Positions 466 through 45,380 are shown, counted from the first letter of the stretch. The stretch is 46,268 bases of DNA from Ministeria vibrans ATCC 50519 (GCA_943704425.1 CALSCP010001341.1:1-46268); one strand, 5' to 3'. A program made the numbers and translations. The notes: generated by a model from the sequence alone, not told the origin.

Positions 466-664
466 GTGCGTCATGGCAAGCCAGCTCACGCGCCTTTTGT
501 GTGTCCTTGTCGAACACTCAAACTCCCCCGCATTGTAAAGCACCCGCCAATTGTACAACCACTATCTTTTTTGGGCTCGAAAAATCGCTTTTCCTTGTTT
601 CTTTTTTCGATTATTTCAATTTCATTCCAAGAGAAAACTGTGTGTGCGTGTGTTTGTGTATGTG

Positions 665-1611: not shown

Positions 1612-1989
1612 CGGACGCTGAGGAATATAAATTAGTAAGAAAATAGTGAACTTTAAATCTAACTCTGCTGTCTCTGCACTCGGAGAGCTCCAGGGGTCAC
1701 ACACACTCATACTCTTACTGACAGTCAGTGTCAGTTAACAGTTTTCTCAGTCACAGCGAGTCAGAGTTCACACTTAGAACCCTAGATGGACCTGACGGAG
1801 TCTTTTTTCTTTTTTTTTTTTGCTCCGTTTCTGTCAATACTCAATCGTTGTGTGATAATTTTCAAAAAAATTTCCTTTTTCCTTTTGTTAAGTCGAAACG
1901 CTCTCTCTCTCTCACTCTCTCTCCTCCGCATTCTCTCCTTCTACGTCCCTGCTCCGTGCTCTGCCTTCTCTTGGAGTCAACCTGACACC

Positions 1990-7900: not shown

Positions 7901-8181
7901 CCTCGTCCAGCCAGCCATCCAAGCAGGCCTCGGTGACATCGTCCGTCGACGATTTCGTTCCTGTCAATGTGCGCGCCGTGTCACGCAGCAGCACTTGCCT
8001 TCCCTCGTCGCAGCTGCCACGGGTGGGCAACGACAAGGACAAGGAGGAGGTAAATGCGAAGGTGGACAATGAGGAGGAGGAGGCAAAGGTGGAGGTAAAG
8101 GTGGAGGAGAAGGCAAAGGTAGAGGATAAGCCGACGCTGAAGCTGGGCTCGACACCACGACTGTACAGCACGGATGTTTGA
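1990..8181 (+). CDS. Large LRR + TKL-type (probable pseudo)kinase + ARM/HEAT-repeat protein
   Basis: ATG 1990; first intron 2221-2628; LRRs (LKRLNMSNNRL, LVQLTFSHNKI, LVALYLDHNSI, LQLLDVSHNDI, LSYVSFAGNPL plus cap-like YFRHFLISELPQVKFID); kinase fold about 4450-5240 (LGYGRFGDV, VSVK, HRNIVTFIG, WSAPEVLRG, DVYALGIIMWE); helical ARM-like repeats about 6550-7880. Confidence 0.8.
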
Positions 8182-14135: not shown

Positions 14136-16776
14136 TCACAGTGTGGGACATGTCGAGAGCCTTCCGCCATGGGCCAACCAGAGATCGTGAGAGAGGGCGT
14201 CGTCGGGGGCGAGCCAGGGTTTGTGGCGGCCGCTCCAGTGGAGAAGACGAGCGTCGTGGGCCAGGGAGGGCGGCAGGGACGTGCGCCAGCCGAGCCCGTC
14301 GACGTTCCAGGCGGCCGGGAGCAGCTCCCATTTGCGGTAGACGGCAAGCAGAAGAGGCGGTTGCGTACCGTACGCGTACAGGTTGTTGCCTGTGTTGGTG
14401 CGCATCCAGAAGAGCAGCTCTGGCAGGAGGGCAGGCCACATGCGCAGGTTGAGCACCAAGACGCCCGCGTTAAATGTGGGCGCAGATGCACTCATCGCGT
14501 GTCCGTAGCGCTCCTCAAAGAATCGCGACACATGTGGCGACCCAAAGAAAGCTCCGTACGTGGGCTGTGCACGCGGCACGGCTGCAAGCGGGCTCCCATT
14601 GGCAACGAGGCGCGCACCAATGACAGCAAGCTCACCCACGTCCCCGAGCACAATGGTGTCGCAGTCGATGTAGACGGCGTGCGCCACGTCGGGAAAGAGC
14701 GAGTGGAAGAAGAAGCGGGCAAAGTTGGCGTGACTTGCCAGGTTGCCGACGACATGCCGGTCGCCACGTACCAGACGAATGCCGTCAAGGGCTCGGCTCC
14801 CATTGAACACGCGCACCTCAACGCGACCCACCGCTTGTTGCAGTCTGTCCAAATCAAGGTCAAGACACTCACGCAAGTGCCGACGCATCCATTCTTCGCT
14901 CATGTCTGATATACTCAAATGCAATTGTATCAGTGCGGGATCGGCAGCAGCGGCAATCATTGAGCGAATGGCCGCCGCCAGTCCCACAAGATGCTCTGCA
15001 TCCGAGCTCAATATTACGTCGTACGGCTCGAATGCCGTCTCGTCCGACTGCGCCGTACACGTAAAACTGCCGGGCCCTGTCTTTTTGCATCTCTCCAGCG
15101 TCTCGTCACAAGTATGCTGTTGTGTGACACATGGGTCCACATCTATAAAAAAATTAATGTAAGTAATCGTCTTTTTAAGCTTTGATGACAATACCAATAA
15201 TAATTTTTATTATTATTATTTTTTACCGAGCACGTAAAGACCCCGATTTTTTCGATCAGTCCATTTTTTCCAGCTTAGTGACGAGGTAATTTCAGATTTG
15301 AGCACTCCATTGGTGTTAAAGCCCACGCATCCTCGGGTGATGTCGCATAACGTCTAACAGTGGAGGGGGGACGTAATAAAACTTAATAATATTATTGTAT
15401 AATGATGGTGATTTTCACACCTTGAGGGCTGTGGTGTTGTCTTTGAAGAGAGTAGCTGAAAACAAATCGCTTCCCTCGGTGTCAAGGCCCGGAAAGAAGA
15501 CGTAGGCTCGCTTGCCAAGGCGGAGTACGGGATCCCAGGGAGTCGTGAGGTTCTGGTCAGCGGAGGTCGACAACACGCTCATGTTGGCGCACCAGGTGTG
15601 ACCGTCGCCGACAAGACCCTCACGGCATTGGCATGAGTACCAGGTGGGCCCGGTGCTTGTGCACACTGCGTCACGGTGACACTGATCCATGTCTTCGGCA
15701 CAAACATCCATGTCGTTGATGTAGAGGCCGCGCGTTGGATCGCTGGTCCACTTGGTCCACTTGTCGCGCGGTGCAATGTGCAGCTTGAGAATACCGTTGG
15801 TGTTGAAACCGGCGCAAATGCGCGCTTCGGCACACAGCTGCTGCAGCTCCTCGACGTTATCCTTTAGCTCCTTGCGCACAATCACATCGGACTTGGGCGA
15901 GTCAACTCCCGGGTAGAACACAAAGGAGCGCCGGGTGGGCTGCTGCGGCAAGGGGATGCCGTGGGCGCGTGCGTATTTGCGCCATCGCTCACGGTCCCTC
16001 TCCTGCCGTGCCAGTGTCAAGCGTCTGTGGCGTCGCAAGGCGGTGGTGTGCTCTTGATCACGCAAACGAGTCGTTTCACGAGCACTTTGAAGTTTTTCAT
16101 AGACAGTGGCAAAGACACGTTTGCTCGCCGAGTTCATGCAGTCACCCATGCTCGCGTCGCCAGTGCCCGACCTCAGTACAGTCGCCTGCAAGTGCCAGTC
16201 CAGAATGGTCGAGACAAAGGAGCAGCGTGCGGGTTGGCGTCGACGGTTGGTCAGTCCCAGCGTGAAAATGCGAACCCTCTCCGAGCTGTGTTGCGTCGCG
16301 AGCGACTCGAGCGCTCGTTGCCACACATGCGCCACTTGACTTCGAATGTACACGGCCACCAAGGTTGTTGCTGGCGAGAGCAACGCTGTCCGGCTGGCGA
16401 GCACGCGCACGAGATTGCGCAAGTAGACCACGCAGGATGCGGCGCACGGCTGCTCCAGTGCAACAATGCAGAGCGAACGCTCTGTCGCACCCGTCAGCGC
16501 GCTTCTTGAACACGCCAAGGACGCAGCGAGAAATGTTTCGGCATCCTGCGTCTCGTCAATGTGTACTTGAAAGGCGGTGGTGCGCATGAGCGAGCCGACG
16601 ACGAACTGACCGAGAGCGCGATTGGCACCTACGACGACACTCGCGACAATCCGTGTGGGCGGAGCGAGCGCAGCCGATGAGTCGCCCACGTATCGCAGTA
16701 CAGACAAGTACACAGCTATGCCCAGGAGTGCACAAACGCAGACAAAGGCTGCTCTGCCTCGTATCCGAATAATCAT
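14136..16776 (-). CDS. Type II membrane glycosyltransferase family 8 (GLT8D/GATL-like) with two PAN/apple-like repeats and EGF-like modules, 3 exons
   Basis: N-terminal TM (AAFVCVCALLGIAVYLSVL); GT8 motifs NFARFFFHSLFP, YIDCDTIVLGDV (DxD), FNAGVLVLNL, TQPPLLL, WNVDGLG, LLHWSGRHKPW; repeats FYPGVDS...CAGFNTNGILK and FFPGLDT...CVGFNTNGVLK; EGF-like CAEDMDQCHRDAVCTSTGPTWYSCQCREGLVGDGHTWC. Confidence 0.82.
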
Positions 16777-16913: not shown

Positions 16914-18064
16914 ATGCCTACAAGGAATATGCGGGCTTTCTTTCGCATTCCCGAGCGCTATAAGTTTGTTGCGCTGGCCGCCACTGGTTTCATGAATGTT
17001 TACGGTCTTCGCGTCAACCTCTCTGCGGCCGTTCCTGCCATGGCGTACGATTCCGAGACCAAGCCCACGCTCTCTCTATACTCATACGCATGCACGCATG
17101 CCAACGCGCCCGCGTGCGCATTGTATAGATCGCTCTAATCGACGGAATAACAATATTAATTTTAGGGAAGAATTTGACTGGACGCCGCAGGAGCGGGGGC
17201 ACATTCTTGGGGCATTCTTCATCGGCTATATTGTGACACAACTTCCTGGTGGAATGTTGGCCACCCGGTTTGGTGGGAAGTGGGTCTTTTGCGTTGGGAT
17301 TCTGCTCACAAGTTTGTTGACACTTCTGACTCCGATTGTGGCGCGCACTCTTGGCGTCAATGGCGTGATAGCCTTGCGGGTAGGAGAAGGGATTGGCGAA
17401 GGGGGTTCGTTTCCAGCGATGCATTCAATGCTGGCAAGATGGACTCCGCCGGCAGAGAGGTCGCGCATGTCTCTGATGGTGTACTCGGGCGCGTACGCGG
17501 GTACCGTGGTGTACTCCCTTGCGTCCGGTGCTCTTCTCACGACTGCTACTGGCTGGCCTTTGATTTTCTACGTGTTTGGTGCGATTGGAGTGGTGTGGAG
17601 CGCTGCATGGGCCTACCTCGCGTACGACTCGCCAGCAAAGCATCCAGCGCTGCGGCACGACGAGCGTGTCTTGCTCAACAAAAACAGTGCGTCTATGCTA
17701 GGATCGACGCAATCGAAGCCTCGCGTGCCATGGCGCGGCATTCTTTCGTCAACAGCGGTGTGGGCCATTGTAGTGGCCCACACCGCAATGAACTTTGGAT
17801 TCTATCTGCTTCTGACCGAGACACCGACCTACCTGCGTGACGTGCTCAACTTTGATCTGGCGGCGGCTGGTGCTCTCTCGTCCATTCCCTACGTGTGCAT
17901 GTTTGTGTCAACGGTGGTTGCCGGCCGCCTTGCCGACCTGTGCATCAACCGACGTCTGATGAGTGTGCGGGTGACGCGTGCTGTCTTCAATGGCGTCTCG
18001 CAAGTCGCCCAGGGTGCCTGTCTTGTTGCCTGCGGTTATGTTGCGTAAGTTATACTACCCGGAA

Positions 18065-28749: not shown

Positions 28750-31254
28750 TCACTCTTCCTGCTTGCTCTTCTTCTTCTTCTTTGTCTTGGGTGCGCCCTC
28801 ATCATCATCATCCTCCCCTGTGCGCTTCTTGCCCTTGCCCTTCTTCTTCTCGCCCTTGAGCAACGACACGAGCGTCTCGTCGACTGCCACAGCGGGCGCC
28901 ACCCGACGCGCACTCGTACCGGCATTTTTACTGTGCGCCCCGCCACCTCCCGCCACCTGCGAGAACAGCCGCTCAATCTCATCGCTCGCTTCGTCTCCTC
29001 CTCCTCGTCCACTTTGCGGCTGCGCTGGCCGATAGTAGTTTTGCCGCTGTCTCCGTCGAAATTGCACCAGACCAATATTCCGCACTACCTTGCGTCCATA
29101 GAAACTTTCGCGCACGAGTGTCTCACGTGCGCCCAGTTCGTCAGCAATGGCCGTTTGGGCTCTCTCGTCGCCCCACTGCCCAGCACGCGCCCACAGGCGC
29201 TCCACCAGATGCGATCCGTACTTGTCCGTCGCCAATGCCACATAGTGCCCTTCCAGCCGGGCCATCAGCGCCCACTGGTCGTCGGCCGACACAGACTCGC
29301 TCGCCATGAACCCTTCCACAATGTGACTGCCAATCGAATGGGCGCTCAGCGAGAATAGTTCGCGGCCGTCCATGTCGAGCAGTCCCCGCACAAACGCCCC
29401 TAACATCTTCTCCGCTGCCTTGCGCTCCTTCTCGTCGCCCTCCACCGCCTGAGGGTTGATCCGCCACACTTCCTGCAGAATCATCGAGCCGTGGTAGTTG
29501 GCCTGCGGCAGTGCCTTGGGCGTCGCCGAGGCACCCCCCTCGCCGCCCGACGCCGTCTCCGATGCGGTGCTGGACGAGGTGCGCTCTTCGTACATGTCAC
29601 GCGCGAGCACATACGCCACCAGACGCGTAATGAGCTTGCGCTGCTCCTTGCTCTCAATGTGAAAGGCATCGCGGAATGCCTGCAAGAGCGCCTTGAAGCA
29701 TGTGTGTGCGCGACGGCAGGCAGCCACCAAACTCGCTGCCACACCCAAATGGTTGTACGCAAGAATATCCTCAAAGTGCTCTAGAATGCCGCTGGCAATG
29801 CGACGCGTGTCCTTGGCTCGCACACACCGACGCAGCAGATGCTGCACCACAAAGTTGCCAACGGGATGTGTGGAGAGCGTCACAAAGCGACCGTCGGGTG
29901 CCGATGCAATAATGCGCGACACTGTCTGCGTCGGCACCACCTGCAAAACCTTCTCCAACACTCGACTGCCCACGGTGTCTTCGGCCAGCGTCCACACATG
30001 CGCAGCTGCACCCTCCTCGCCCTCCTCGCCATCGTTGACGTCGTCGAGCCCCAGAAGCGCATCCGTGACGCGCTCGCAAAGAGAGGGGAAACGATCGTGC
30101 AGCGCCACGAGAAGCACCTGAAGAACGCCACTGGGTCCTTCGGTGGCGGCAAGAAGGCGCACAGTCGTCTTGGACACGACAACGTCGTCCTCACTGTCAT
30201 ACATCGCCGACTCCTCCTCCTCGTCCTCCTCCGCACGCCCTTGCTCCTCCTTCTCCTCTTTCTGCTCCGTCTTGTCTTCAGCACTTTTGGCGCGCTTCTC
30301 TCTGCGATCTTTGGGCTGCGGCGGCGGTTGTTCCTTGAGAAGCACGCCCACAAGACGCAGTAGCTCGGCGATGAAGGTGTCGGGCACGCGAGTGCGCTGT
30401 GTCTTGGTCTGTCGCATTTTGCGCAGGGCGTCTGCTGCGCCCGCATCCAATGCGGCGTACTGTTCGCTCGTGGCGTCCTCGTCCCCATCTTTGGGGGTGT
30501 CCACCATGTCTGCGTCGCCGCTGAGTGCAACCTGACGCGCCGCCGTGGCTACACGACCCGCATAGGCGACACTGTTGCGCGAGCGCATCACACCAAGTTC
30601 AACTTCGGCGCCACTCAAAATCTGAAGGATCAGACGGAGTACATGGCTCGCATAAGGGTTGTAGACAAGTTTGGCCATCTTTGCCGAGAGCAGCAACTCC
30701 TGGGTGGAGCGCACAATCAGCGCGGCAGCCGATGGTAGGGTGCCCTCCTCCTCATCAGCATCAGCATTGTCGTCGTCGTCGTCGCTGTTGTCGTCGTTGT
30801 CGCCGTTGTGGCTCGGTCGCTCCAGCTCACGAACGGCCGTCTGAGCCACAAGCTGGAGCGTCGTCTGCACGAGATGCGACGAGTATTGCCCGCGACACAC
30901 GCGGGCCATTTGGCCGGCAAACGAGTCGAGGAACACCCGGCGCTGAAAGGGCGACGCCGCATGCATGAGCTTCTCAAGGACACGCGAGCACTGTGTGTCC
31001 TGCGACAGAGTGACCTCGTGGCCCCGCACCTCGGAGAGAACATTGCCCACGAACAGGGCAAAGTCCTCCTCGTCGTCGTCGTCGCTGTCGTCGCTGTCGT
31101 GTGCGTCGTCCTCTCGCGTGGCACGGCGATCGCCCTTCTTTGGCGCCCCCGTGGCCCCCTGTCGTTTGTCAAGGATCCGTTCCACTCGAGCGTAGTACTC
31201 AAGCGTGGCGTCGTCCACGAGAGCCGACTTGCGAGCAGCCCCACCACTACTCAT
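28750..31254 (-). CDS. NOP9: Nucleolar protein 9 (Pumilio-like repeats, 18S rRNA maturation), single exon
   Basis: 834-aa ORF; ATLEYYARVE, LSQDTQCSRVLEKL, GQYSSHLVQT, NPYASHVLRLIL, DTVGSRVLEKVL, HPVGNFVVQHLL, IGSHIVEGF, LATDKYGSHLVERLW. Confidence 0.88.
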   Translation of the reverse strand: MSSGGAARKSALVDDATLEYYARVERILDKRQGATGAPKKGDRRATREDDAHDSDDSDDDDEEDFALFVGNVLSEVRGHEVTLSQDTQCSRVLEKLMHAASPFQRRVFLDSFAGQMARVCRGQYSSHLVQTTLQLVAQTAVRELERPSHNGDNDDNSDDDDDNADADEEEGTLPSAAALIVRSTQELLLSAKMAKLVYNPYASHVLRLILQILSGAEVELGVMRSRNSVAYAGRVATAARQVALSGDADMVDTPKDGDEDATSEQYAALDAGAADALRKMRQTKTQRTRVPDTFIAELLRLVGVLLKEQPPPQPKDRREKRAKSAEDKTEQKEEKEEQGRAEEDEEEESAMYDSEDDVVVSKTTVRLLAATEGPSGVLQVLLVALHDRFPSLCERVTDALLGLDDVNDGEEGEEGAAAHVWTLAEDTVGSRVLEKVLQVVPTQTVSRIIASAPDGRFVTLSTHPVGNFVVQHLLRRCVRAKDTRRIASGILEHFEDILAYNHLGVAASLVAACRRAHTCFKALLQAFRDAFHIESKEQRKLITRLVAYVLARDMYEERTSSSTASETASGGEGGASATPKALPQANYHGSMILQEVWRINPQAVEGDEKERKAAEKMLGAFVRGLLDMDGRELFSLSAHSIGSHIVEGFMASESVSADDQWALMARLEGHYVALATDKYGSHLVERLWARAGQWGDERAQTAIADELGARETLVRESFYGRKVVRNIGLVQFRRRQRQNYYRPAQPQSGRGGGDEASDEIERLFSQVAGGGGAHSKNAGTSARRVAPAVAVDETLVSLLKGEKKKGKGKKRTGEDDDDEGAPKTKKKKKSKQEE

Positions 31255-31358: not shown

Positions 31359-34300
31359 ATGCTGACTGGCTTTGTAGTTGGCAGCGTGTTGGGGGCGCTG
31401 CTCGTGCTGGTGGTCCAAGTGATTGTTTTGACGCGCATCCTCAAGCGCTACTACGCACCCCAACGAATGCTCCCCATCGAGAACCTCCTGGCTTCCGTGC
31501 GCACCCGATACGGAACCGTCTCGCCGGCGGAGGTGCGAGGCATCCAGCGCGAGCTTGCCCACGCCCACAGAGACGACGAGGAGTCCGCGACCTGGCTCAA
31601 CATTCTCATGCAAAAGTGGTATTCCGAACTTCGTCCGACTCCCGTCCGTCGCGCCATTGCCGATCTGCTCCGCTTTGAGTTTGAGATGGTCCGCCGCTCG
31701 CTGCTCGGTCGCGCCTTGAGCATCCTCCATTTCAAAGATTACAGGTGTGTGGTGGTGCAACAAAGTTTTCAATGACTCGTCTGATCGCACTCCTCACTCA
31801 CTCCCTCACTCACTCACTCTCTCACTCCCTCGTCTGATTCATAGCCTTGGAAGTAGACCGCCCGTCATCCATTCGATTCGCTTCATATCAGCCAATCAAA
31901 TTGCCAAGGCAGGCGAGAAGGACGACGAGACGCTGCGGGCAGTTCGTCGTTCGACTGTTCTCACCGCCAGCACCTCCGAGTCGGCTGTTCCCGCTTCCGC
32001 CGATCCCCCATCAATGGGTCGCAACGGCTCTGCACGGAGCACTACCACCACAAAGTCGACCAGCGAAGCGCCGTGGTCGTCGGCCACGCGTGGTGGCTCC
32101 TCCCGCTCACACGCCATCCCCACATCAGCCTGGATTGACGGTGTGCTTGTCGTGGATTTCTCTTTCGCAGGCAACTTCAACATTACGGCCGAGGTCGAGA
32201 CCATTGTGGGTCTGGTGGGCATTTTTAGCATTTCGGTGCGCGCCGTGCGCGGACAGTGTGTCATCAAAATGCCCGCGGACACGCCCGGCACCTACCTGTT
32301 CGGGTTTATCGGCGATCCCGACGTGCGTCTCGACATTAGCGTTTTGCTAGGCGGCCACGAACTCAGCGGCGTAGGCTTTCTTGTCGATCGTGCAGTGCGC
32401 AGTGTCATTCGCGAGCGATACACGCTGCCTAACCTCGTCGAGGTGCACGTCGACATCAATAGTGGCGTGCTCGAGACGCGCGGTGTGCTCTCGGGTGTCA
32501 CCCCCAATTCAGCATCGTCGGCGTTGCTCAGCTCGTCGCAGACTCACACGTGGCAGGAGAACGTCGACTTTGCGTCGGGCACTCGCTGCACCCTCTGTGT
32601 CAATGCCATCCCTCGCTCAGGCATCATCTGCCGCTACTGTTCACTCATCTGCGACCGCAACTGTCGCTCGCGCTCTCTTCTTGACGTCTGTCCCGGCACG
32701 CAAGGCAAACTTCTCGACCGTCTGCGTCTACTTGGTTGGCGCGACAACTCGTATGCAGCATTGCAGTCAACTCCATCGCCCGGTCTCGGTAGCGATGACA
32801 CCACAACACGCGAGGCGACACTGCAACCGCCACAATCACGCGCAAGTTCACGGCCGCCGATCCTCAATTCCAAGGCGTCGTCATCACCATCGCCGTCTCC
32901 CAGTCTGTCGCCGTCGGTCATTCGCACGCAGAACAGCCTGCGCAACACAGTCACTGTCTACGACATGATCCCCGGTCGTCTTTCGGTGCGTGTGCTGCGA
33001 GGCACGAACCTTGCCGCCAAGGACCGCAGCACCAATGCCTCCGATCCCTACGTGATCATGTCGTTGGGTTCGGAGCAGCGCAAGACGCGCAAGATTCGTC
33101 GCGAGCTCAATCCAGAGTGGGATGAGACCTTTGAGTTTGATGTGAGGACCTCGCGCACAGGGATCAAGTGCAATCTGCTGCGTCTCGACGTGTACGACTG
33201 GGATGCCATGAGCCACGACGACTACATGGGCGGCGTGGTGATCTATTTGCACGATCTGTGTCCCTCGGTCAAGCACCAAGAGGCCTTTGAGCTCATGCCG
33301 CGTCGCAACGAGCAAGTAAGCGGCTCCGTTGTGCTCGAGCTGCTCTTCATCGCCGACCAGAGCCGTACGGCTCCATCCACGACTACAAATCCAGTCGCGT
33401 CGTTTGTTGCGGACCGTTCTCGCCGCAGCCACACGTCATGGTTGCTCGACGACGATGCCGCCAACGCCGTCTCTCCCGTGGGCAGTGGTGGCGGCAGTGG
33501 TGACGACCTCCTTGTCATCGACGACCCTGATCACGCTGTGCCCCGCGACAATCTCTCCTCCAAGCTCAAGCGTGAACAGGCCTTTGAAAACTTTGTCACG
33601 TCCGAGCGCTCCTTTGTTGATTCCCTTGAGAATTGTCGAGAGGTACCAACGCAATGATGATTATTTTACATCAATGACTTTTTTTTTTGTACAGGTGTAT
33701 CTGAATCGACTACTTGCGCAAGACTTTTGCGGCGAAGGAACACTAGTTGCGCGACTGTCGACGCTCTTTGGCAATGTGATTTCGGGCTGTCGTGAGTTTG
33801 TGACGGAATTGTCGCAGGTGAAGCGCGAGCGCACCAAACACCCTCTGGCACAGGTGGGCGAGCTTTTCTCGAACAAGACTCGCATGCACGATGCCTTTCT
33901 GGCGTACTCCATGACATCGCCTGAGCTCGTGCAGCAGATCGAGCAGCTTGCCGCCCAGAATGCGTCGTTGAGTACGCTGCTGGCCCACGGCCGTGACGAC
34001 CCGCGTGCCCACGGGCTCAGCGCCGTCACCTTCTTCAACGAGCCGGCCGTGCACTTTCTCGAATATGGCATTTTCTTTGAGCGTCTTCTTGAGCTGTGCG
34101 AGCCCACTGATCCCGAGTACGACCGCCTTGCCGAGTCTCTCTCGCTGGTCAACCGTACACACACACAGATCCTCAAGAACAACGAACGCTCGCGTATGAA
34201 CCGCCTCCTCAGCGACATTCGTCACTCGCTTCAGACCAACGCCTCTACCGATGCTCTCCTTGCCATCAACGATCCCGCGCGTCGTCTCCTCTTTGAGGTA

Positions 34301-35944
34301 CCTTTTTACTTGTGTGTTTTGTGTTTGTGTGTGACACTTGTGCACGTTTGGTTGTGTGTAGGCTCATGTTACGTCCGCTCGGGGTGATCCCTGTGTCTTC
34401 ATTTTGCTTGACAATGTCGTTCTCATTGCGAAAGAAGACGTAAGCTTGACTACTACTAATACGAAAGATATAATAATGTTTTTTTTTATTATTCTAATGT
34501 CCGCAGCGGCACACGTCGATATCGGCGAGGGGAGTGAGCCGTACACTGCGCCCCATCGGCGACCCTTACCCGCTCGAAGACCTGACACTGGCACCCGTTA
34601 GCTGCAACGACGAGTCCGACTCCACCCGCGACCACCATCCGTCTCTGCGCCGCCTCAATTCCGCGAACACCAGCAGTCCCACCAAGGACAAGGACAAGAC
34701 CACTCCCGCAGTTCGCGCAGTCACTTTTCTTGCCACACCCGCTCAGGCCCCTCCTCCTTCCTCTCACGGACGTCTCTCGCTCTTCCCCAGCGATACCTCT
34801 ACTGTCCCAAACTCACAGGGTGTCACCTGCCGCATCAGTCGAATGGATGGCTCCCAACCTTTTGTCGTCACTACCGACACGGAAGCTCAGGTAAACGAGC
34901 AGCTCAATTCTTACCCAAGTCTCTTTTGTTATTACTGACGGTTTTTTCACAGTTGCGGCGCATTATTCGGGCGGTGGAGTCGGCAGTGGATGCGCTGCAG
35001 CACGCGGGGCAGCGTTTGAGCCGCATGCCGAACCTTAACAATGCAATTTCGTGGCTGCAGTCGGCTGTGCTGATGCGTGACAGTGCGCCAAACCCAGAGG
35101 TACAGCAGCAGAGTGAGTGAGCGATAGGCGCATGATTCATGGATTGGTTTTACTAGATATTCGCCAAGGAGGAGCAGATCAAGGCGCTGGCGGCCATGAT
35201 ACGCCTGCACGAAACGGAAGTGGAGGAAGTGATGCTTGCGAGTGGGTCCGTCGAAGAGACGCACACGTCGACCAATCGCGTTGCTGCACTTCAATCCGAA
35301 CTCAACGAGCTCCAACGACGCCACGATGATCTTAAGGTTAGCCAGGCATCGTGCTAATAATAGTTGTAACTATATTCATTTTTATTCAGGCGGAAGTGGA
35401 TGTGATGCGCCATACGGCTTCGTCGGGCGCGTCTTTGCTAGCATCCGGCAGTCGTGTGCAGTCTGTCCCTGTACCCCTCGTCACCAGCTCAGCAGATCAG
35501 GAACAGTTTCAAAAGTCGTTTGAGCTTCCACCTCAAATCCTTTTTATTGCGGGTACAACAATATAACACACAAATTGGACTGTGCGCGCTCTGACTTGTA
35601 TTGTATATTTGTCATAGCATTTTCATGTGCACAGCGTGGCAGTGGCTACTCAACTGGCCTGCTCTTTGTCACTCCCGAGTATGTCTGCTACAAGGCAAAG
35701 TCTTTGCTCCGGCGCACTCTCAAGGTAGAAAGATGTTCGTGGAGACTATTGAACTCAACACGCATTATTATTATTTTGGTGTGTCAAGGTCAAGTTCCAA
35801 CGAGCAGCCATCCAGTCAGTCGCGTCAGTGGGTACCGACACCATCCAGGTTGTGCTTGCCGGTGGCACTATCTATGTGTACACGGGCTTTTCCTCCCAGC
35901 TCGAGTGGCAGAATGCCAAGTCGGTCTTGTCCCAACGTCTGTAA
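31359..35944 (+). CDS. Multidomain protein: N-terminal TM, SMP lipid-transfer domain, atypical C1, C2, RhoGEF (DH), PH-like and GRAM domains
   Basis: TM MLTGFVVGSVLGALLVLVVQVIVL; SMP ESATWLNILMQKWY...LGSRPPVIHSIR...FGFIGDPDVRLDI...IRERYTLPN; C1 about 32545-32690; C2 about 32970-33350; DH REQAFENFVTSERSFVDSL...FFNEPAVHFLEYGIFFERLLELCEPTDPEY; GRAM FQKSFELPP...FSCA...GLLFVTPEYVCYKA; stop TAA 35942-35944. The middle exons are less certain. Confidence 0.72.
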
Positions 35945-36279: not shown

Positions 36280-38620
36280 ATGGGCAAATCCAAGACTGGA
36301 AAGCACCGTCGTGACAAGTTCTACCATCTTGCCAAAGAGTCAGGCTACCGTAGTCGTGCCGCCTTCAAGTTGCTTCAGGTGCGCCGCTCAATGAAAGACC
36401 GAAAATGGGAAATATTATGTCGGCCTTCAACTCACCGTCTTCTTTCTGCCTCTACCGTCGAATCCATTGTAGCTGAATCGCAAGTTTGACTTTCTACGCA
36501 CTGCCAATGTTGTGCTTGATCTCTGTGCCGCACCAGGTAGGTTTATTGTTGCGATTTTCGCGTTTGCATGCGCAGAATAAAAAATGAAAAAAAAAAAAAG
36601 GCAGACAGCTCAGTGTTGTGTATTCTCTCTCTGCACAGGCGGTTGGAGCCAAGTGGCCGCCAAGCACATCCCACAGTCGGCGAGTCCGATCATTGCGATT
36701 GATCTGGTGCCGTTCAAGCCTATCCCGCGCGTGACGGGTCTTGTGGAGGACATTACAACGGAGAAGTGCCGTGCGGCGATCAAGCGCGAGACCAACGGCG
36801 CCAAGGTCAGTTTTATTATTATTATTATTCTTATTCTTGATATTATTATATTGCTGTTGTTATTATTATTCTTATTCTTGATATTATTATATTGTTGTTG
36901 TTATTATTATTCTTATTATTGTTGTTATTATTATTATTGTTGTTGTTGTCGTTGTTATTATTATTGTAAGAAGAAGTCTCGAGAGAGAGAGAGAGAGACG
37001 GAGACAGAGGAGGGAGAAAGAAACAAAGTGATAGAGAGAAAAGAACGAAAAAAAATATCGATAGAGCGAGAGGGAAGGAGACCTTGCATATGTCTTTGTA
37101 CAAAAAATCAATACAACTTATTATTGATGTTTGTTTTAGGCTGATGTCGTGCTTAACGACGGAGCGCCCAACGTGGGTCGTTCGTGGCTGCTCGATGCGT
37201 ACGGCCAGACGACGTTGACTATGCACGCACTGCGTCTGGCAACGGACCACCTGCGCGAGGGAGGCTGGTTCGTCACCAAGGTGTTCCGCTCCAAAGACCA
37301 CAATGCCCTTATGTGGGTGTTTCAGCAGCTCTTCCGCAAGGTGCACATGACCAAGCCGACGGCGTCGCGAAACGAATCCGCCGAGATCTTTGTCGTGTGC
37401 CAGCACTACCTGGCGCCCGCTCACATTGACCCCAAGCTGCTTGATGCGCGCTTTGTCTTTGAGGACGTGGACACGGGCAACAAGGCGACGCCGTCGCGTC
37501 CCGAAGATCTTTTTGGGCCCGAAACGAAGAAGTTGCGCAAGAAGCGACTGCAGGAGGGCTTTGACAACGAGGCGGGCGGCGCAGTCTTCAAGAAGCTGCC
37601 AGTCATGCGACTGATTGGGGCCAAGGAGCCCATTGCACTGCTCGCGGAACACAACCAAGTGGTGTTTGAGCCGCCGCCGGATGCTACCTCATCCGACGTC
37701 GAGTACACGCGTCTCTATGCGGAGCACAAGGCAACCACAACCGAGCTGCGTGCGCTCTTTGAAGATTTGCGTGTCATTGGCAAGAGCGACCTGCGTCACA
37801 TTCTCTCGTGGCGCAACAAGATGCGCGTGTACCGCGGCGAATTGCGCAAGTTGCGCGGCGAGGCGCCGCTCAACAGCGACGACGACGACGACGACATGGG
37901 CGATGCCAACGACAGTGGTGACGACGCCGACGGCCAAAAGGGCACCATCAGCATGCTGCGTCGTGTGGCCGCCGGTGGAGGCACTCTGTCGGCTCGCGGT
38001 GCCACAACGAGCGAGGGTGACGCCATTGAGGAGTCCGAGGACGAGGAGGACGCCATCAACCGACAATTGGACGAGATTGAGGAGCGCACACGGCGCGAGA
38101 AGAAACGTCAACAACGCAAGCTGCTCAAGCGTAAGATCAAGGAGCGCGAACGACTCAATCTCAAGATGGTGGTGCCCGGCGATGTGCCCGAGGTGGGCGA
38201 TGAGGGCGTGCTCTTCTCGGCTAAAAAGGCGCGCGTGGCAGGTACGGCGTTCTCGGGTGCAGCAGACGATGTGAATGTCGACTCGGAGGAGAACGATTTG
38301 GGGATTCACATTGGCAGTGACGAAGAGGAGGAGGAGGAGGAGGAAGAGGAGGAGGAGAATGGCGATGATGATGACGACGATGATGACGACGATGATGACG
38401 ACGATGAGGCGCTGGTCGCGCGACGTGCCTACCACGATAAGTTAGCGAGTGAATTTGACAATGAGTATGAGGACTTCAAGCGACGCCAGGCGATTCAGCA
38501 GAGTGTCACGCGTGTCAAGGTGTCCAAAAAGATCAACCAGCGTCGCGACGATCTACTTGACGAGGCGACGGATCGCGTGGTGGACGGGATCACGCGGGGG
38601 GAGAGTCGGAAGCGACGAGG

Positions 38621-38653
<33 letters not shown>

Positions 38654-40046
38654 AGAGGGTCCTCGTGTTGCTGGAGGCGAAGGGAAGAAACGGGCACGCA
38701 CCACTGCGACGACGACAACAGGCTCGTCACGCAATGCGGCCATGTGGTTTAGTCAGGATACTTTTGCGGACATTGATGATGAAGCAGAGCTGGAGCGTGA
38801 GTTGGAGAAGCATCGCAAGGAAGAGAAGAAGAAGAAGCGCAAGGCACAACGGGTGCGAGAGGAAGAGGAGGAGGCGGCGGCAGCGGCCGCGTACACGAAG
38901 AAGACGCAAAAGAACAAGAAGAACAAGCGCAGCCTTGAAATGAACGAGACTGACGACGTTGCCATGGACGATATGGAGGTAGACAGCGACGACGACGACG
39001 ATGATGATGAGTACGAGGATGTCGACGCGGATGCGTTGGAGGGGGTGCCGGCGCGGAAGAAGCGCAAGGTTGCGTTGGCCATTGAGAAGATTCCCATGGC
39101 AGAGGAGCTACCGAGCGAGGGCGAGAGCGACGACGATGATGAAGGAGCAGTGGGAGCGGATGCGATGGACGACGACGAAGCGATTGTGATGATGATGCAG
39201 GCGGCGGCGGAGGAACGCAAGCGCATGCGACGGCGCGACGAGGAGGAAGAGGAGCAAGAGGCACGACGCAAGGAGAAGGACGATAAGCGCAGCAAGAAGA
39301 AGCAGGCGCGTGCGGCGATTGATCCTTTGAGTGTGCACGACACCACGTCGACGTTCAAGCGCAAGGGCGACGCAGTGCTTGTGGACGGCATTGAGATTGT
39401 GCCCAAACCCAAGCCCAAGGGTGACTATGACGAGGAAGACGCCGAGGACGAGTTGGCGGTGAGTCGGGGTGGAGACGAGGCGATTCCACAGCGGCTCGAT
39501 GCGGAAGGAATGGCATTGGCGAAGCAGATGTTGGACAAGAAGCGGCGTCAGGAGCTCATTGACGGATCATTTGGTCGCTTTGCGTTTGCCGACCATGGCG
39601 GCATGCCGACGTGGTTTTCTGAGGATGAGCGCAAGCACAACTACTTTATGGCGCCCGTGAGTAAGGAGGCAGTAGCCGAGTACCAGTCACGCGAGCGGGA
39701 CATCAATGCGCGCACGGTGAAAAAGGTTGCCGAGGCGATTGGACGCAAGAAGACGCGACTGTCGCGACGCATTGAGAAGGCCAAGGCACGCGCAACGACC
39801 ATCAGCAACACGCCGGATCTGACCGAGCGACAGAAGATGAAGCAGATGGTCAAGGTGATTGGGCGGGCGCAGTCAAAGAAGAAGGAGATCAAGTACGTGG
39901 TGGCCAAGAAGGGAGGTGGACAACGTGGCAAGAAGCCCACGAAGAAGGGCGAGCAGTACAAGGTTGTGGATCCGCGCCTGAAGAAGGACATGCGCGGCAA
40001 GAAGCGCGCGGAAAAGAGGAAGAGCTCATCAAAGAGGCGCAAGTGA
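36280..40046 (+). CDS. FTSJ3: Pre-rRNA 2'-O-ribose methyltransferase Spb1/FTSJ3
   Basis: [87 protein letters not shown]; C-terminal [12 protein letters not shown]...[10 protein letters not shown]. Confidence 0.97.
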
Positions 40047-42673: not shown

Positions 42674-45380
42674 ATGCGTGTGTTTGTGAATCAAGTGGAC
42701 ACGTATGTGTCGGGTGCCGTGAGTAAAGTAGGCACATTACAACCGTAGATGTGTCTGTCTGTGTGTGTGTGTGTGTGTTTATGTGAAAACCGAAAAATTC
42801 TTGTATTTTATTTTTCAGCTCTTCTCGACGACCATTCCCGGCTCCCATCGATCCTTGCGACAACGCGACGACGACCATGATGAGTACGACGGTCAGCACG
42901 AGAGCCAAAGCGAGGCGAACGGCCCGTCACACAACAAAGAGAGGGAACTAGAGCGCTATGAAGTGTGGGGGACGCTGCAAGATCCATTGGCAACACGGCC
43001 CGCTTGGGTACGTCGCATTGTGCGTGTTGCCTCCATGGACGATCTTTTGGCGGCCGTTCTCGAATGTGATGTCGTTGTGTTCAACGTGGAGAGCGACAGT
43101 CACGAGTGTGTTGCGGCGACTGCGGTGATTGAAGCAATCGAGCTGGCACTGACTGCAGGCCAACGCGCACGACCCACGACATTTGTGTGTCTCAGCTCGG
43201 TGATGACGTGGGCGCGCACCAAGCCGGCGGACGTCGATAATCCAGCTACACCCCTGCTCGAGGAAGAGTATCGTCGTCGTCGTGCTCACCCCAACTTTAA
43301 GGAGGCGCAACAGGTAGAGAAAATGACAGTCAAGTTGGGAAAGACGGCGAAGGGTGCCTTGCACGTGGCCGTGATTGCGACTGGCATTGTGTACGGCGGC
43401 GGCGAAGGCCCCTTGCACTTTCTGTTTCGACAGGCATGGGAACACGGCGGTGAGCGGGGTGCAGCGGGAGCACTTCCCATCTTTGGTGACGGCCTAAACC
43501 AACTCGCCATGATCCATGTGCATGACTTGGCGCGTGTGGTGGTCTACGAGAGCGAAGGGGCACGCGTCGGCACCGACAGCGAGAAGCAACGCTACGTAGT
43601 GGCAATCGACAATGGTCAGGTGACCCTTGGCGAGCTTGTGCGCTTTGTTAGTGAGCGACTGGCGGGCGGGCGGGTGCGCACATGTCCAGCAACAGTCGAT
43701 TCTCTTGTGCACGTCCCCGAGCTCACCCAGTCCAGTTACGACAAGCTTGTCACGTCGATCAATATTGAGCCGGCGCTTGTGCAAGACTACGAGTTTGAAT
43801 GGGTTGCACAAGAGGTAAAACAAAAACATAGCCTAGGGATGAGAACTTTTAATAACAATTTCATATCTTTATCATGACGTCTTAATGTAGGGTATCCTTG
43901 AGTATGGAGGGGCGTGCATCGGGGAGTATCGGAGGGCACGAGGACTGGGGGCCGTGCGAGTGGTGGTACATGGACCACCGGGAGTGGGCAAGACACGGCT
44001 GACTGAGCGAATTTGCAAACACTACAAGGTTGAGCGGGTAAACGTGGCATCGGTGGTGGCGGAGGCAGTGGCGCGACTGGAGCGCAGCGAAGCGAAGCTC
44101 AAAAGGGCCCAGGCGGGCAAAAGGGTTGCTTTGGATGACGACGTCGACAAAGATGGTGATGATGATAGTGGTGATGGTGATGGCGATGATGCATTTGCGG
44201 GCGATCGTGAAGAGAGAGTGGGAGAGGAAGAGGGTGAGACGGCGGCAGCTGCAGGTGCGTTGGCGCGCGAGCCAGATGCGGAGTATGAAGAGGCACTGGC
44301 GGAGCTGATGCCAGTGTGGCAGCAAGACACGGAGTACCTGGCAGAGCTGCGAGAGATGGCACAAGAGCACAACGGACGCTATCCCGATGAACATGTCGTG
44401 CAGTTTGTGCGAGACAAGTTGCTATCCCGTCGCTGTCGCAACCGTGGCTATGTGCTCGACGGATTTCCGCGCACCTACGCGCAGGCACAAGAGTTGTTTC
44501 GACGGCCCGAGAACGAAGAGGAGGAGGAAGAGGACGAGGACGACGGCGAGAGGGACACGGAAGAACACGATGACGATGATGAGGAGTCGCGCGAGTACGA
44601 TCGACGTCTCATGCCCGAGCAGGTCTTTGCACTGCAGGCCGACGACTGCTTTCTGCGTGAACGCATTATCAACCTGCCCGAGTCGCTAGTTGCCGGCACG
44701 CACAACACCGAAGAGGGTCATCGACGACGACTGGCGGTGTTTCGTGCGCACAACACAGACGACAGTACGGTGCTTAACTACTTTGACGAGCTTGAGGTGC
44801 ACCCAGTGGAGCTGAAGGTGGCACACGACGACGACGAGGACGTGTGTGTGTGGCCGGCTGTGCTTCGCGCACTAGGCAAACCACGCAACTACGGGTTGAC
44901 CGACGAGGAGAAGGCGGCCAAAGCGAAAGCAGAGCAGCAGCAAATGGTACGCACGCGCGCGAGCGCGGAGACCCGAGAGTCACATGAGATCATATCAATA
45001 CTAATAATTATTATAATGACGAACAAAAATAGGAAGCAAGGGAGAGGGTCGAGCAAGAAGAGCGTGTACGCAAGGAGACCATGCGGGCACGGGAGCAGGA
45101 GCGAGCACAAGCAGATTGGGTAAGAAGATTTTGACCTTGTCCCTGCTGCTAGGGTCACCATCTGACTTTGCTTGTTGGGTAGACAAAGCGCGTGGAGACG
45201 GTGCGACGGGACGAGGCGGTGCTGCTAGAGGCGCAGTCGATGCCGCTGCGACACTATCTGATGCAACATGTGATGCCGACACTCACCAAGGGACTGGTGC
45301 AGATCAGCAAGACGCGGCCAGATGACCCAGTCGACGCGCTCGCAGAGTTTCTGTTGCGTGACAATGTCAGAAATCAGTAG
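42674..45380 (+). CDS. AK7: Adenylate kinase 7 (axonemal; NAD-binding-like fold + AK + Dpy-30 motif), multi-exon
   Basis: MRVFVNQVDTYVSGAVSK, FVCLSSVMTWART, EEEYRRRRAHPNFKE, VHGPPGVGKT, CRNRGYVLDGFPRTYAQA, LGKPRNYG, LEAQSMPLRHYLMQHVMPTLTKGLVQISKTRPDDPVDALAEFL. Confidence 0.93.

What the first reader, a model, noticed from the sequence alone, without database searches (positions are those of the whole stretch)
31359..35944. Predicted ER contact-site lipid-transfer protein fused to a RhoGEF: TM-SMP-C1-C2-DH-PH-GRAM
Seen: one gene model with no intervening intergenic gap joins an N-terminal TM, an SMP domain, a C1 domain with the second Zn-ligand His replaced by Asp (CRYCSLIC-D-RNC), a C2 domain retaining all five Ca-binding Asp (KDR..SDPY; YDWDAMSHDD), a DH domain, a PH-like region and a terminal GRAM domain. 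SMP, C1, C2 and the start of DH are in a single exon (about 31845-33642). Known: TM-SMP-C2 defines extended synaptotagmins/tricalbins, TM-SMP-C1 recalls PDZD8, GRAM senses PM lipids, and DH-PH activates Rho GTPases. I know of no described protein combining SMP with DH-PH. Inference: a single-chain module coupling Ca2+/lipid-gated membrane tethering and lipid exchange to local Rho/actin signalling. This is my best candidate for an undescribed system in the window.
Basis: partly seen in the sequence, partly recalled or inferred. Interest (0 to 1): 0.8.

Follow-up and report, generated by a model that had tools for sequence, protein, structure and literature searches.

The report
PDZD8-like lipid-transfer protein with RhoGEF module
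A single 10-exon gene of a unicellular relative of animals encodes an ER-anchored lipid-transfer (SMP) protein related to PDZD8, fused to C1, calcium-type C2, a divergent RhoGEF (DH-PH) cassette and a GRAM domain; this architecture recurs in a few other unicellular holozoans and I found no paper that describes it.

Summary
Window 31359-35944 (+) is one gene of 10 exons. All nine introns are GT-AG and 52-100 nt, no exon has an internal stop, and the CDS is 4002 nt, about 1333 aa.

Domain support:
- C2: strong, with all five Ca-ligand Asp present.
- DH: Pfam RhoGEF above its cut-off.
- SMP: supported by profile-profile homology to PDZD8 (99.7%, E 3e-25) and by an AF2 model whose only PDB matches with Z of 5 or more are Mmm1, Mdm12, E-Syt2 and TMEM24 SMP domains.
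- C1: atypical. The second His ligand is Asp in the window only.
- GRAM and PH: supported mainly through colinear orthologues.

The same architecture occurs in Pigoraptor, Capsaspora (CAOG_03028, "hypothetical"), Chromosphaera and one unnamed assembly. All other relatives found are canonical PDZD8 (SMP-PDZ-C2-C1). This is therefore a small holozoan paralogue family of PDZD8, not an E-Syt.

The CR3 pair is replaced in every family member. Exchange activity is therefore doubtful.

I found no paper describing SMP combined with DH-PH. The scan's notes hold nothing similar on other DNA.

Verdict: a new variant of a known kind.

The parts
31359..31744 (+). Exon 1: start ATG, N-terminal hydrophobic anchor (aa 2-25, about 31362-31433), linker, and the first SMP helix and strand (from about 31575)
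   Evidence: frame, GT donor; orthologue profile positions 1-140, E 1e-18; hhalign aligns the family TM+SMP with the PDZD8 TM+SMP.
31845..33642 (+). Exon 2 (599 codons): rest of SMP, C1, linker, C2, first DH helix (CR1)
   Evidence: profile positions 138-604, E 1e-94.
31845..32496 (+). SMP (TULIP) barrel, with a disordered Ser/Thr-rich insertion of about 80 aa (about 31891-32136)
   Evidence: AF2 model m93c3f9a74cd9, core pLDDT >90. Foldseek: Mmm1 8e-5, E-Syt2, TMEM24, Mdm12. VIA-wide: the only five chains with Z of 5 or more are SMP domains, Z 7.0-8.0.
32545..32700 (+). Atypical C1 zinc finger; second His ligand replaced by Asp; one extra residue between the first His and first Cys
   Evidence: Pfam C1_1 E 0.002, below cut-off. 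Orthologues P0009 5e-9 and P0002 5e-7. Ligand columns.
32974..33291 (+). C2 domain with all five Ca2+-ligand Asp
   Evidence: Pfam C2 4e-23. PDB sequence hits to synaptotagmins, ferlins and PKC. Asp columns invariant in the orthologues.
33556..33642 (+). DH helix 1 / CR1, with the conserved Glu retained (motif T-S-E-R-S-F-V)
   Evidence: aligned to the Q-T-E-T-T-Y-V of a canonical DH, P0028.
33695..34297 (+). Exon 3: remainder of the DH domain (CR2, CR3, last helix) and the first PH strand
   Evidence: Pfam RhoGEF 5e-9, 37 bits, above cut-off. Weak intersectin matches. E 3e-10.
34362..34439 (+). Exon 4: PH-like strands (motif L-L-D-N-V-V-L-I, as in the orthologues)
   Evidence: Alignment. No significant score on its own.
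34507..34890 (+). Exon 5: PH-like strands interrupted by a low-complexity insertion
   Evidence: Reading of the sequence. No significant score. PH is inferred from the orthologues (PH_13 and PH_16 weak hits; DH-PH fold hits).
34953..35336 (+). Exons 6-7 (34953-35099, 35157-35336): PH C-terminal helix and a helical, coiled-coil-like region
   Evidence: frames. Helices at the equivalent place in the P0009 model. Inference only.
35390..35552 (+). Exon 8: linker and the start of GRAM (motif D-Q-x-x-F-x-K-x-F-x-L)
   Evidence: profile positions 1085-1117, E 0.03. Alignment.
35618..35724 (+). Exon 9: GRAM core strands and basic patch
   Evidence: Pfam GRAM E 0.15, profile positions 20-47. Orthologue profile E 1.5e-7.
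35789..35944 (+). Exon 10: end of GRAM, stop TAA at 35942-35944
   Evidence: E 0.3, colinear.

Best explanation
What it is. This is a real single gene. It encodes an ER-anchored lipid-transfer and tethering protein of about 1333 aa, from a small family restricted to unicellular holozoans and paralogous to PDZD8.

Shown:
- An N-terminal TM helix and an SMP/TULIP barrel homologous to those of PDZD8 and Mmm1.
- An atypical C1.
- A C2 with a complete Ca2+ site.
- A DH fold followed by a PH-like region.
- A helical stretch.
- A C-terminal GRAM.

Inferred mechanism. The TM holds the protein in the ER. The C2 (Ca2+ and acidic lipid) and the GRAM and PH (anionic lipid or sterol) bind a facing membrane, most likely the plasma membrane. 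The SMP, probably as a dimer, then moves glycerolipids across the gap.

Role of the DH-PH cassette. I take it to be a Rho-family GTPase recognition module that ties the contact site to places where such a GTPase sits. This would be analogous to the Rab7-binding C1-CC of PDZD8. Whether it also catalyses exchange is open. Three canonical GTPase-contact positions are substituted, so I lean slightly (about 55:45) to weak or no canonical GEF activity.
For: Gene model. The orthologue profile hits the exons colinearly and nowhere else.

SMP: hhalign of the family profile against a PDZD8 profile gives 99.7%, E 3e-25, over TM+SMP. The AF2 core has pLDDT >90. Foldseek top hits are Mmm1, E-Syt2, TMEM24 and Mdm12. 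In the VIA wide search the only chains with Z of 5 or more among 48,161 are five SMP domains. PDZD8_N is precomputed on the orthologues.

C2.

DH: Pfam 37 bits against a 27.6 cut-off. The family DH profile aligns to a canonical DH, E 6e-5.

Family-wide architecture: Pfam on P0002, P0003, P0005 and P0009. The full-length P0009 model hits E-Syt2 SMP-C2 at 4e-13 and many DH-PH structures at about 1e-7.

Paralogy to PDZD8: the other SMP-matching relatives are SMP-PDZ-C2-C1. The window's genome has a second Mmm1/PDZD8-clade SMP gene. CAOG_03028 is absent from the published Capsaspora SMP set that includes its PDZD8.

Doubt on catalysis: the CR3 motif 'P-x-Q-R-x-x-K/R-Y' reads P-A-V-H-F-L-E-Y in the window. 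In the alignment, none of the five family members has the Gln or the Lys/Arg at those columns. hhalign confirms the register for P0002 and phmmer confirms it for the window. The Asn of the last helix aligns to Leu in the window. A published precedent states that the CR1 Glu and CR3 Lys matter, and calls a DH lacking the conserved catalytic and contact residues a pseudo-GEF (PMC5727386).
Against: - No transcript data exist for this genome. PH, coiled coil and GRAM in the window rest on short exons that score weakly alone.
- The exons were never joined for a search or a fold, so there is no whole-protein model of the window's own protein.
- The Pfam SMP models (SMP_LBD, MMM1) do not hit the window's exons.
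- The P0009 model is of low confidence, mean pLDDT 52.
- The target membrane and the lipid cargo are pure inference.
- From my own knowledge, some active Dbl GEFs tolerate loss of the CR3 Lys, and the CR1 Glu is retained here. A real GEF cannot be excluded.
Confidence: 0.6

Rival explanations
1. One reading: a fully active Dbl-type RhoGEF tethered to an ER contact site. Ca2+- and lipid-gated tethering would then switch on Rho, Rac or Cdc42 and actin remodelling locally.
For: The DH passes the Pfam gathering score. The CR1 Glu is retained in the window, P0002 and P0003. DH is followed by a PH-like region as in canonical GEFs. The C2 has a complete Ca2+ site.
Against: The CR3 Gln and Lys/Arg are replaced in all five members. 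In the window, the last-helix Asn is replaced as well. The window has Glu and P0002 has Asp at the Lys position. Capsaspora and Chromosphaera members no longer match Pfam RhoGEF even at E of 10 or less and lack the CR1 Glu. A DH domain lacking the conserved catalytic and contact residues has been shown to be inactive (PMC5727386).
Confidence: 0.3
2. Annotation artefact: two neighbouring genes (an SMP-C1-C2 tether and a DH-PH-GRAM protein) read together as one.
For: There are no transcript data for this genome. Exons 4-7 have no significant score of their own.
Against: The C2 and the first DH helix lie in one uninterrupted exon, 31845-33642. There is no stop and no intergenic gap. All splice phases fit. 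Four orthologues have the same colinear order. One is listed in EukProt as a Pigoraptor protein. Another is an intronless 1307-aa ORF on an independent contig.
Confidence: 0.03
3. It is simply this organism's PDZD8 orthologue after domain shuffling, working at ER-late endosome contacts as PDZD8 does, with the DH-PH and GRAM as decaying passengers.
For: PDZD8 is the closest known family for TM+SMP. Both carry C1, a C2 and a helical C-terminal part.
Against: No PDZ domain is found in the window's exons or in any orthologue. The domain order differs: C1 before C2. The genome has another Mmm1/PDZD8-clade SMP gene that matches PDZD8 better, 7.5e-14 against 6.4e-8. Capsaspora is reported to have a PDZD8 orthologue, and CAOG_03028 is not in that data set. 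GRAM is conserved with Pfam-significant scores in two members, so it is not decaying.
Confidence: 0.07

Closest known systems
PDZD8 (metazoan/holozoan ER-late endosome SMP protein)
   Same: N-terminal TM anchor plus an SMP domain that is clearly homologous (hhalign 99.7%, E 3e-25). It is the nearest family in a scan of 1.8 billion proteins. Both have a C1, a C2 and a helical C-terminal region. Newer Pfam labels the orthologues' N-terminus PDZD8_N.
   Different: No PDZ domain. C1 precedes C2. The C2 has a complete Ca2+ site. DH-PH and a C-terminal GRAM are added. The family coexists with another Mmm1/PDZD8-clade gene in the same genome, so it is a paralogue.
Extended synaptotagmins / tricalbins
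   Same: ER-anchored TM-SMP-C2 logic, with Ca2+-type C2. The E-Syt2 SMP-C2 structure is the best structural match of the full-length orthologue model (4e-13).
   Different: Only one C2. The SMP is closer in sequence to PDZD8/Mmm1. Pfam SMP_LBD does not hit the window. No E-Syt appears among the sequence relatives.
Dbl-family RhoGEFs, including pseudo-GEFs such as the Bcr DH-PH
   Same: DH helical fold above the Pfam cut-off, followed by a PH-like domain. The CR1 Glu is retained.
   Different: The CR3 Gln and Lys/Arg, and in the window the last-helix Asn, are replaced. Two family members are unrecognisable to Pfam RhoGEF. No known Dbl protein is fused to an SMP domain in the searched literature.
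GRAMD1/Aster and yeast Lam/Ltc proteins
   Same: ER-anchored lipid-transfer proteins that use a GRAM domain to sense the facing membrane. This is established knowledge, not tested here.
   Different: Those carry a StART-like sterol-transfer domain and a C-terminal TM. Here the transfer module is an SMP, the TM is N-terminal and the GRAM is at the far C-terminus.

Membership tests
SMP / TULIP lipid-transfer domain | TULIP barrel fold (long helix wrapped by a highly curved beta-sheet) | tested here: met
   AF2 model of window:31846-32736 with core pLDDT >90. Foldseek top hits are Mmm1, E-Syt2, TMEM24 and Mdm12. In the VIA wide search the only Z of 5 or more hits are five SMP chains (Z 7.0-8.0); other TULIPs (CETP, BPI, Der p 7) follow at Z 4-5. 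The exon-1 part of the domain was not in the model.
SMP / TULIP lipid-transfer domain | Sequence homology to a recognised SMP family | tested here: met
   hhalign of the family against PDZD8: 99.7%, E 3e-25. The 72%-identical fragment P0001 hits SMP_LBD at 0.0015, and P0002 hits MMM1 at 0.005. The Pfam SMP models do not hit the window's exons directly.
SMP / TULIP lipid-transfer domain | Binds and transfers glycerolipids | not testable with these tools
   Needs liposome transfer or lipid-binding assays.
PDZD8 | N-terminal TM followed directly by a PDZD8-type SMP | tested here: met
   the alignment covers TM+SMP. PDZD8 proteins are the next-best hits.
PDZD8 | PDZ domain after the SMP | tested here: not met
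   No PDZ hit in any exon or in any orthologue. All 13 PDZD8 hits have it.
PDZD8 | C-terminal C1-coiled coil that binds Rab7 | not tested
   Here the C1 lies before the C2, not before the helical region. Rab7 binding was not examined.
Extended synaptotagmin / tricalbin | SMP of the E-Syt type (Pfam SMP_LBD) followed by several C2 domains | tested here: not met
   One C2 only. No SMP_LBD hit in the window. The sequence neighbours are PDZD8, not E-Syt.
Dbl-family RhoGEF | DH domain fold and profile | tested here: met
   Pfam RhoGEF 37 bits against a cut-off of 27.6, on exon 3 alone. P0002 7.6e-13 and P0003 5.8e-12.
Dbl-family RhoGEF | PH domain immediately after the DH | tested here: inconclusive
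   The window's exons 4-5 align to the orthologues' L-L-D-N strand but have no score of their own. In the orthologues there are weak PH_13 and PH_16 hits and DH-PH fold matches from a low-confidence model.
Dbl-family RhoGEF | Conserved CR1 Glu | tested here: met
   The window's T-S-E-R-S-F-V aligns with the canonical Q-T-E-T-T-Y-V. The Glu is absent in P0005 and P0009.
Dbl-family RhoGEF | Conserved CR3 Gln and Lys/Arg and C-terminal-helix Asn (GTPase switch contacts) | tested here: not met
   The window has Val, Glu and Leu at these positions. None of the five family members has the Gln or the Lys/Arg. The importance of the Glu and Lys is taken from PMC5727386. The importance of the Asn and Gln rests on my own knowledge.
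Dbl-family RhoGEF | Catalyses GDP/GTP exchange on a Rho-family GTPase | not testable with these tools
   Needs a mant-nucleotide exchange assay.
Ca2+-binding C2 domain | Five acidic Ca2+ ligands in loops 1 and 3 | tested here: met
   K-D...S-D-P-Y and Y-D-W-D-x4-D-D in the window. The same columns are invariant in four orthologues (D440, D446, D493, D495 and D501 of P0002).
Typical (DAG/phorbol-ester-binding) C1 | H-x12-C-x2-C-x13/14-C-x2-C-x4-H-x2-C-x7-C, with a Pfam C1_1 score above cut-off | tested here: not met
   The score is 18.3 bits against a 26.5 cut-off. The second His is Asp, and the spacings are 13 and 8. The P-x-F-C and Q-G motifs of typical C1s are not present; that they are needed for DAG binding rests on my own knowledge.
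GRAM domain | Match to the GRAM profile | tested here: inconclusive
   In the window, exon 9 scores only 0.15, at the right profile positions. The orthologues P0003 (26.3 bits) and P0005 (26.1 bits) pass the 23.6 cut-off. The window's exons 8-10 align colinearly to them (exon 9 E 1.5e-7).

The most novel reading that the evidence does not exclude
An ancestral holozoan contact-site protein, lost on the line to choanoflagellates and animals, unites in one chain Ca2+- and lipid-gated ER-plasma-membrane tethering, SMP lipid transfer and genuine local activation of a Rho-family GTPase. It would do so through a non-canonical DH interface, directly wiring membrane-lipid homeostasis to actin and cell-shape control in amoeboid relatives of animals.
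Probability: 0.25. Interest if true: 0.75.

Novelty: new variant of a known kind. Interest (0 to 1): 0.55.

Why it matters
A 2024 review lists five kinds of SMP proteins: E-Syt/Tcb, ERMES, TMEM24, PDZD8 and Tex2/Nvj2 (PMC11320393). None carries a GEF-type domain or a GRAM domain.

This family adds a sixth architecture. It is a sister of PDZD8 that survives in filastereans and an ichthyosporean, and it was not found in animals. Its Capsaspora member was not in the published SMP phylogeny data set.

The family offers a natural test of whether lipid-transfer contact sites can be coupled in cis to Rho-family GTPases. From my own knowledge, Capsaspora is experimentally tractable, which would make that test practical. 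The family also bears on how PDZD8 acquired its GTPase-dependent targeting.

If the DH is a pseudo-GEF, it would be an example of a Dbl fold reused as a targeting or scaffold module.

Tried and rejected
Steps that led nowhere:
- Exon-wise Pfam did not find SMP and found GRAM only weakly.
- Searching the window's genome with Pfam SMP_LBD found nothing, and its controls also failed, so the result is uninformative.
- PF26547 is not in the local Pfam copy.
- The word-based search with the four-orthologue alignment was swamped by multi-C2 proteins and added no family member.
- The same tool restricted to the SMP-C1 part of P0002 returned only P0002 and the Capsaspora protein.
- hhalign of the whole-family profile against a canonical DH protein showed only the C2 match. 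I therefore cut the DH region out in a script.
- The PDB profile search with A3 was dominated by its PDZD8 rows, so it is not an independent test for this family.
- The full-length Chromosphaera model has low confidence, pLDDT 52. Its fold matches are supporting evidence only.
- The scan's notes hold nothing under the words SMP, RhoGEF, GRAM or PDZD8.

Readings rejected:
- Two fused gene models.
- Membership of the E-Syt family.
- Orthology to PDZD8.
- A typical DAG-binding C1.

Steps not done:
- Joining the exons into one protein for any search or fold.
- Complex prediction of the DH-PH with a Rho GTPase. No intact GTPase sequence of the same organism was at hand, and a 'no support' result would not have been informative.


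Full report
**Gene model**

The region 31359-35944 (+) lies between two ribosome-biogenesis genes. Upstream is a divergently transcribed Nop9-like PUF gene (28750-31254, minus strand). Downstream is an Spb1/FtsJ-type rRNA methyltransferase gene, starting at 36280.

Reading the sequence gives ten exons: 31359-31744, 31845-33642, 33695-34297, 34362-34439, 34507-34890, 34953-35099, 35157-35336, 35390-35552, 35618-35724 and 35789-35944. A per-exon script shows the following:
- All nine introns are GT..AG, 52-100 nt long and AT-richer than the exons.
- No exon has an internal stop in its frame.
- The phases fit, with two split codons, AG|C and G|CA.
- The CDS totals 4002 nt, about 1333 codons plus TAA.
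- An in-frame stop lies shortly upstream of the ATG.

The exons were never joined for any search or fold.

**Domains found directly in the window**

| Domain | Result |
|---|---|
| C2 | Pfam E 4e-23; phmmer against PDB chains finds synaptotagmin, ferlin, PKC and E-Syt2 C2 domains |
| RhoGEF (DH) | Pfam E 5e-9, 37 bits against a gathering score of 27.6, on exon 3 alone |
| C1_1 | E 0.002, below cut-off |
| GRAM | E 0.15 on the 35-residue exon 9, at the correct profile positions |
| SMP models | No hit |

The five Ca2+-ligand Asp of the C2 are present (K-D...S-D-P-Y; Y-D-W-D-x4-D-D).

The C1 has all Cys ligands and the first His. The second His is Asp (C-x2-C-x4-D-x2-C), and the spacings are 13 and 8 residues rather than 12 and 7. 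It is therefore an atypical C1.

**Relatives**

I ran a phmmer scan of the SMP-C1 part of exon 2 (window:31846-32736). The library held 1.84 billion representative proteins. Only 20 hits came back at E of 0.001 or better.

The closest hits and their sources:
- A 135-aa fragment, 72% identical, from assembly GCA_025491055.1.
- P0002, Pigoraptor chileana, 1307 aa, 36% identical.
- P0003, 1307 aa, an intronless ORF on a contig assembled from run SRR33270664.
- P0005, Capsaspora owczarzaki CAOG_03028, "hypothetical protein", 1590 aa.
- P0009, Chromosphaera perkinsii, 1157 aa.

Pfam on the four full-length proteins:
- P0002: MMM1 (weak), C1, C2, RhoGEF, PH_13 (weak), GRAM (just below its cut-off).
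- P0003: C2, RhoGEF, GRAM.
- P0005 and P0009: C1, C2, GRAM (P0009's GRAM just below its cut-off).

Of the remaining hits, thirteen are canonical PDZD8 proteins: twelve have SMP(MMM1)-PDZ-(C2)-C1 and P0020 is a PDZ-only fragment. The other two are P0004, a 316-aa metagenome protein without Pfam hits, and P0018, a fish protein matched over about 30 residues in eight stretches; neither was followed up.

Further points:
- All four full-length proteins align colinearly with the window's exons from the TM helix to the last GRAM strand.
- A profile of the four hits exons 1, 2, 3, 8, 9 and 10 in order. E-values are 1e-18, 1e-94, 3e-10, 0.03, 1.5e-7 and 0.3. Profile coordinates abut at the splice junctions. 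Nothing else in the 46-kb window scores at E<1.
- In the window's own genome (29.7 Mb, 2860 contigs) the gene is single-copy.

The orthologues fit the earlier notes of this scan that the genome looks holozoan.

**The SMP domain**

1. Homology. hhalign of the four-orthologue profile against a profile of 13 PDZD8 proteins gives probability 99.7% and E 3e-25 over 246 columns. These cover the TM helix and the whole SMP.
2. Structure model. An AlphaFold2 model of window:31846-32736 was built with a 20-row alignment. The SMP core has pLDDT above 90. The Ser/Thr-rich insertion and the C1 are of low confidence.
3. Foldseek against the PDB ranks Mmm1 first (5yk7, 8e-5). E-Syt2 (4p42), Mmm1 (5yk6), TMEM24 (5tod) and Mdm12 follow.
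4. VIA-align against 48,161 representative chains, independent of Foldseek, finds exactly five chains with Z of 5 or more. All are SMP domains: Mmm1 8.0, Mdm12 7.7 twice, E-Syt2 7.7, TMEM24 7.0. More distant TULIPs (a carotenoid-binding protein, CETP, Der p 7, BPI) follow at Z 4-5.
5. A newer Pfam release labels the N-termini of P0001, P0002, P0003 and P0005 as PDZD8_N.

The SMP fold is therefore supported, and its clade is PDZD8/Mmm1 rather than E-Syt.

**Paralogue or orthologue of PDZD8?**

- No PDZ domain is detectable in the window's exons or in any orthologue.
- The C1 precedes the C2.
- The window's genome has a second Mmm1/PDZD8-clade SMP gene (G000:C774:55382-55989). It matches a PDZD8 query better than this gene does, 7.5e-14 against 6.4e-8, and passes the Pfam MMM1 cut-off.
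- Wideman and colleagues report that Capsaspora has orthologues of PDZD8, Mmm1, Mdm12 and Mdm34 (PMC6069729). CAOG_03028 is not among the Capsaspora sequences in their supplementary list.

I therefore read the family as a paralogue of PDZD8 that earlier SMP surveys did not include.

**The DH-PH cassette**

The DH is real as a fold. It scores above the Pfam cut-off in the window, P0002 and P0003.

The DH-region profile of the five family members aligns to the canonical DH of an unrelated protein (P0028, Pfam RhoGEF 1.6e-67). The E-value is 6e-5 over 177 columns.

That alignment, together with the phmmer alignment of exon 3 to intersectin-1 (1ki1), fixes the register of the conserved regions.

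| Position | Canonical | Window | Other family members |
|---|---|---|---|
| CR1 Glu | Q-T-E-T-T-Y-V | Kept (T-S-E-R-S-F-V) | Kept in P0002 and P0003; lost in P0005 and P0009 |
| CR3 | P-V-Q-R-I-P-R-Y | P-A-V-H-F-L-E-Y | P0002 P-E-R-R-I-M-D-Y; P0003 P-I-E-R-Q-R-A-Y |
| Last-helix Asn | Asn | Leu, by the intersectin alignment | No Asn 21 residues after the conserved Pro in P0002 or P0003, by my count from the alignment |

No member has the Gln or the basic residue at the CR3 positions.

Reckel et al. state that a CR1 Glu and a CR3 Lys are important for catalysis. [quoted passage not shown] They called it a "pseudo-GEF" (PMC5727386).

P0005 and P0009 do not match Pfam RhoGEF even at E of 10 or less. 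A full-length AF2 model of P0009 is of low confidence, mean pLDDT 52. Even so, it is matched by Foldseek to many DH-PH structures over about 350-380 columns: intersectin 1.2e-7, Xpln, NET1, p115-RhoGEF, Vav1, LARG. It also matches E-Syt2 SMP-C2 at 4e-13 and Munc13 C1-C2.

My reading is that the DH-PH cassette is ancestral to the family and structurally retained, but that its canonical catalytic surface is eroded. From my own knowledge, individual active GEFs lack the CR3 Lys. Activity is therefore not excluded.

**Mechanism**

Shown:
- One chain with an N-terminal hydrophobic anchor.
- A PDZD8-type SMP barrel.
- An atypical C1.
- A C2 with a complete Ca2+ site.
- A DH fold with a PH-like continuation.
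- A helical region.
- A GRAM domain.

Inferred, by analogy with PDZD8, E-Syts and GRAMD1/Aster:
- The TM sits in the ER.
- The C2, GRAM and PH bind the facing membrane, probably the plasma membrane. The C2 would do so in response to Ca2+.
- The SMP shuttles glycerolipids.

PDZD8 is targeted by binding Rab7-GTP through its C1-coiled-coil (PMC11320393). By analogy, I propose that the DH-PH here serves mainly to recognise a Rho-family GTPase. That would place or regulate the contact, with exchange activity possible but doubtful.

**Novelty**

Full-text searches found no paper describing an SMP-DH fusion. The term combinations covered SMP, RhoGEF, Dbl homology, GRAM, PDZD8 and unicellular holozoans.

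A 2024 review lists five SMP protein classes, none of them like this.

The orthologues are present in public databases as unnamed or hypothetical proteins with automatic domain labels. The novelty is therefore that of an uncharacterised, taxonomically narrow family: filastereans, one ichthyosporean and two unidentified sources. No animal, choanoflagellate or fungal member appeared.

I class it as a new variant of a known kind, namely SMP contact-site proteins. The scan's own notes contain nothing similar on other DNA.

Noticed in passing
window 28750-31254 (-) and 36280-40046 (+): The gene is flanked by two ribosome-biogenesis genes. Upstream is a Nop9-like PUF protein (Pfam PUF_NOP9, 1.5e-85), transcribed divergently from a shared gap of only 104 bp. 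Downstream is an Spb1/FtsJ rRNA methyltransferase (FtsJ, DUF3381, Spb1_C), whose first exons are separated by a low-complexity stretch.
   Followed up: partly
G000:C774:55382-55989 (locus L001/L003): A second Mmm1/PDZD8-clade SMP gene in the same genome (Pfam MMM1 1e-5, above cut-off; 31% identical to a PDZD8 over 127 aa). I did not determine whether it is the Mmm1 or the PDZD8 orthologue.
   Followed up: partly
window 31891-32136: A Ser/Thr/Ala-rich, predicted-disordered insertion of about 80 aa sits inside the SMP barrel, between the first strand/helix and the core sheet. Shorter insertions occur at the same place in the Pigoraptor and SRR33270664 proteins, and almost none in Chromosphaera or in PDZD8.
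   Followed up: partly
window 31790-31835 (intron 1): A CTCA/CTCC-type pyrimidine-rich microsatellite-like run fills the 3' half of the first intron.
   Followed up: no
window 3496-8181 (+): A long open frame (1561 aa) with a protein kinase domain (2e-38) and a weak Armadillo repeat. Other genes in the window include an MFS transporter (16996-18048), an EGF-containing protein (15415-16776, minus strand) and an adenylate-kinase-like protein (43954-45123).
   Followed up: no
L005 (Logan SRR33270664 contig, 6002 nt), gene 253-4176: The orthologue P0003 is encoded without introns on its contig, unlike the nine-intron gene in the window. The source organism is unknown.
   Followed up: no
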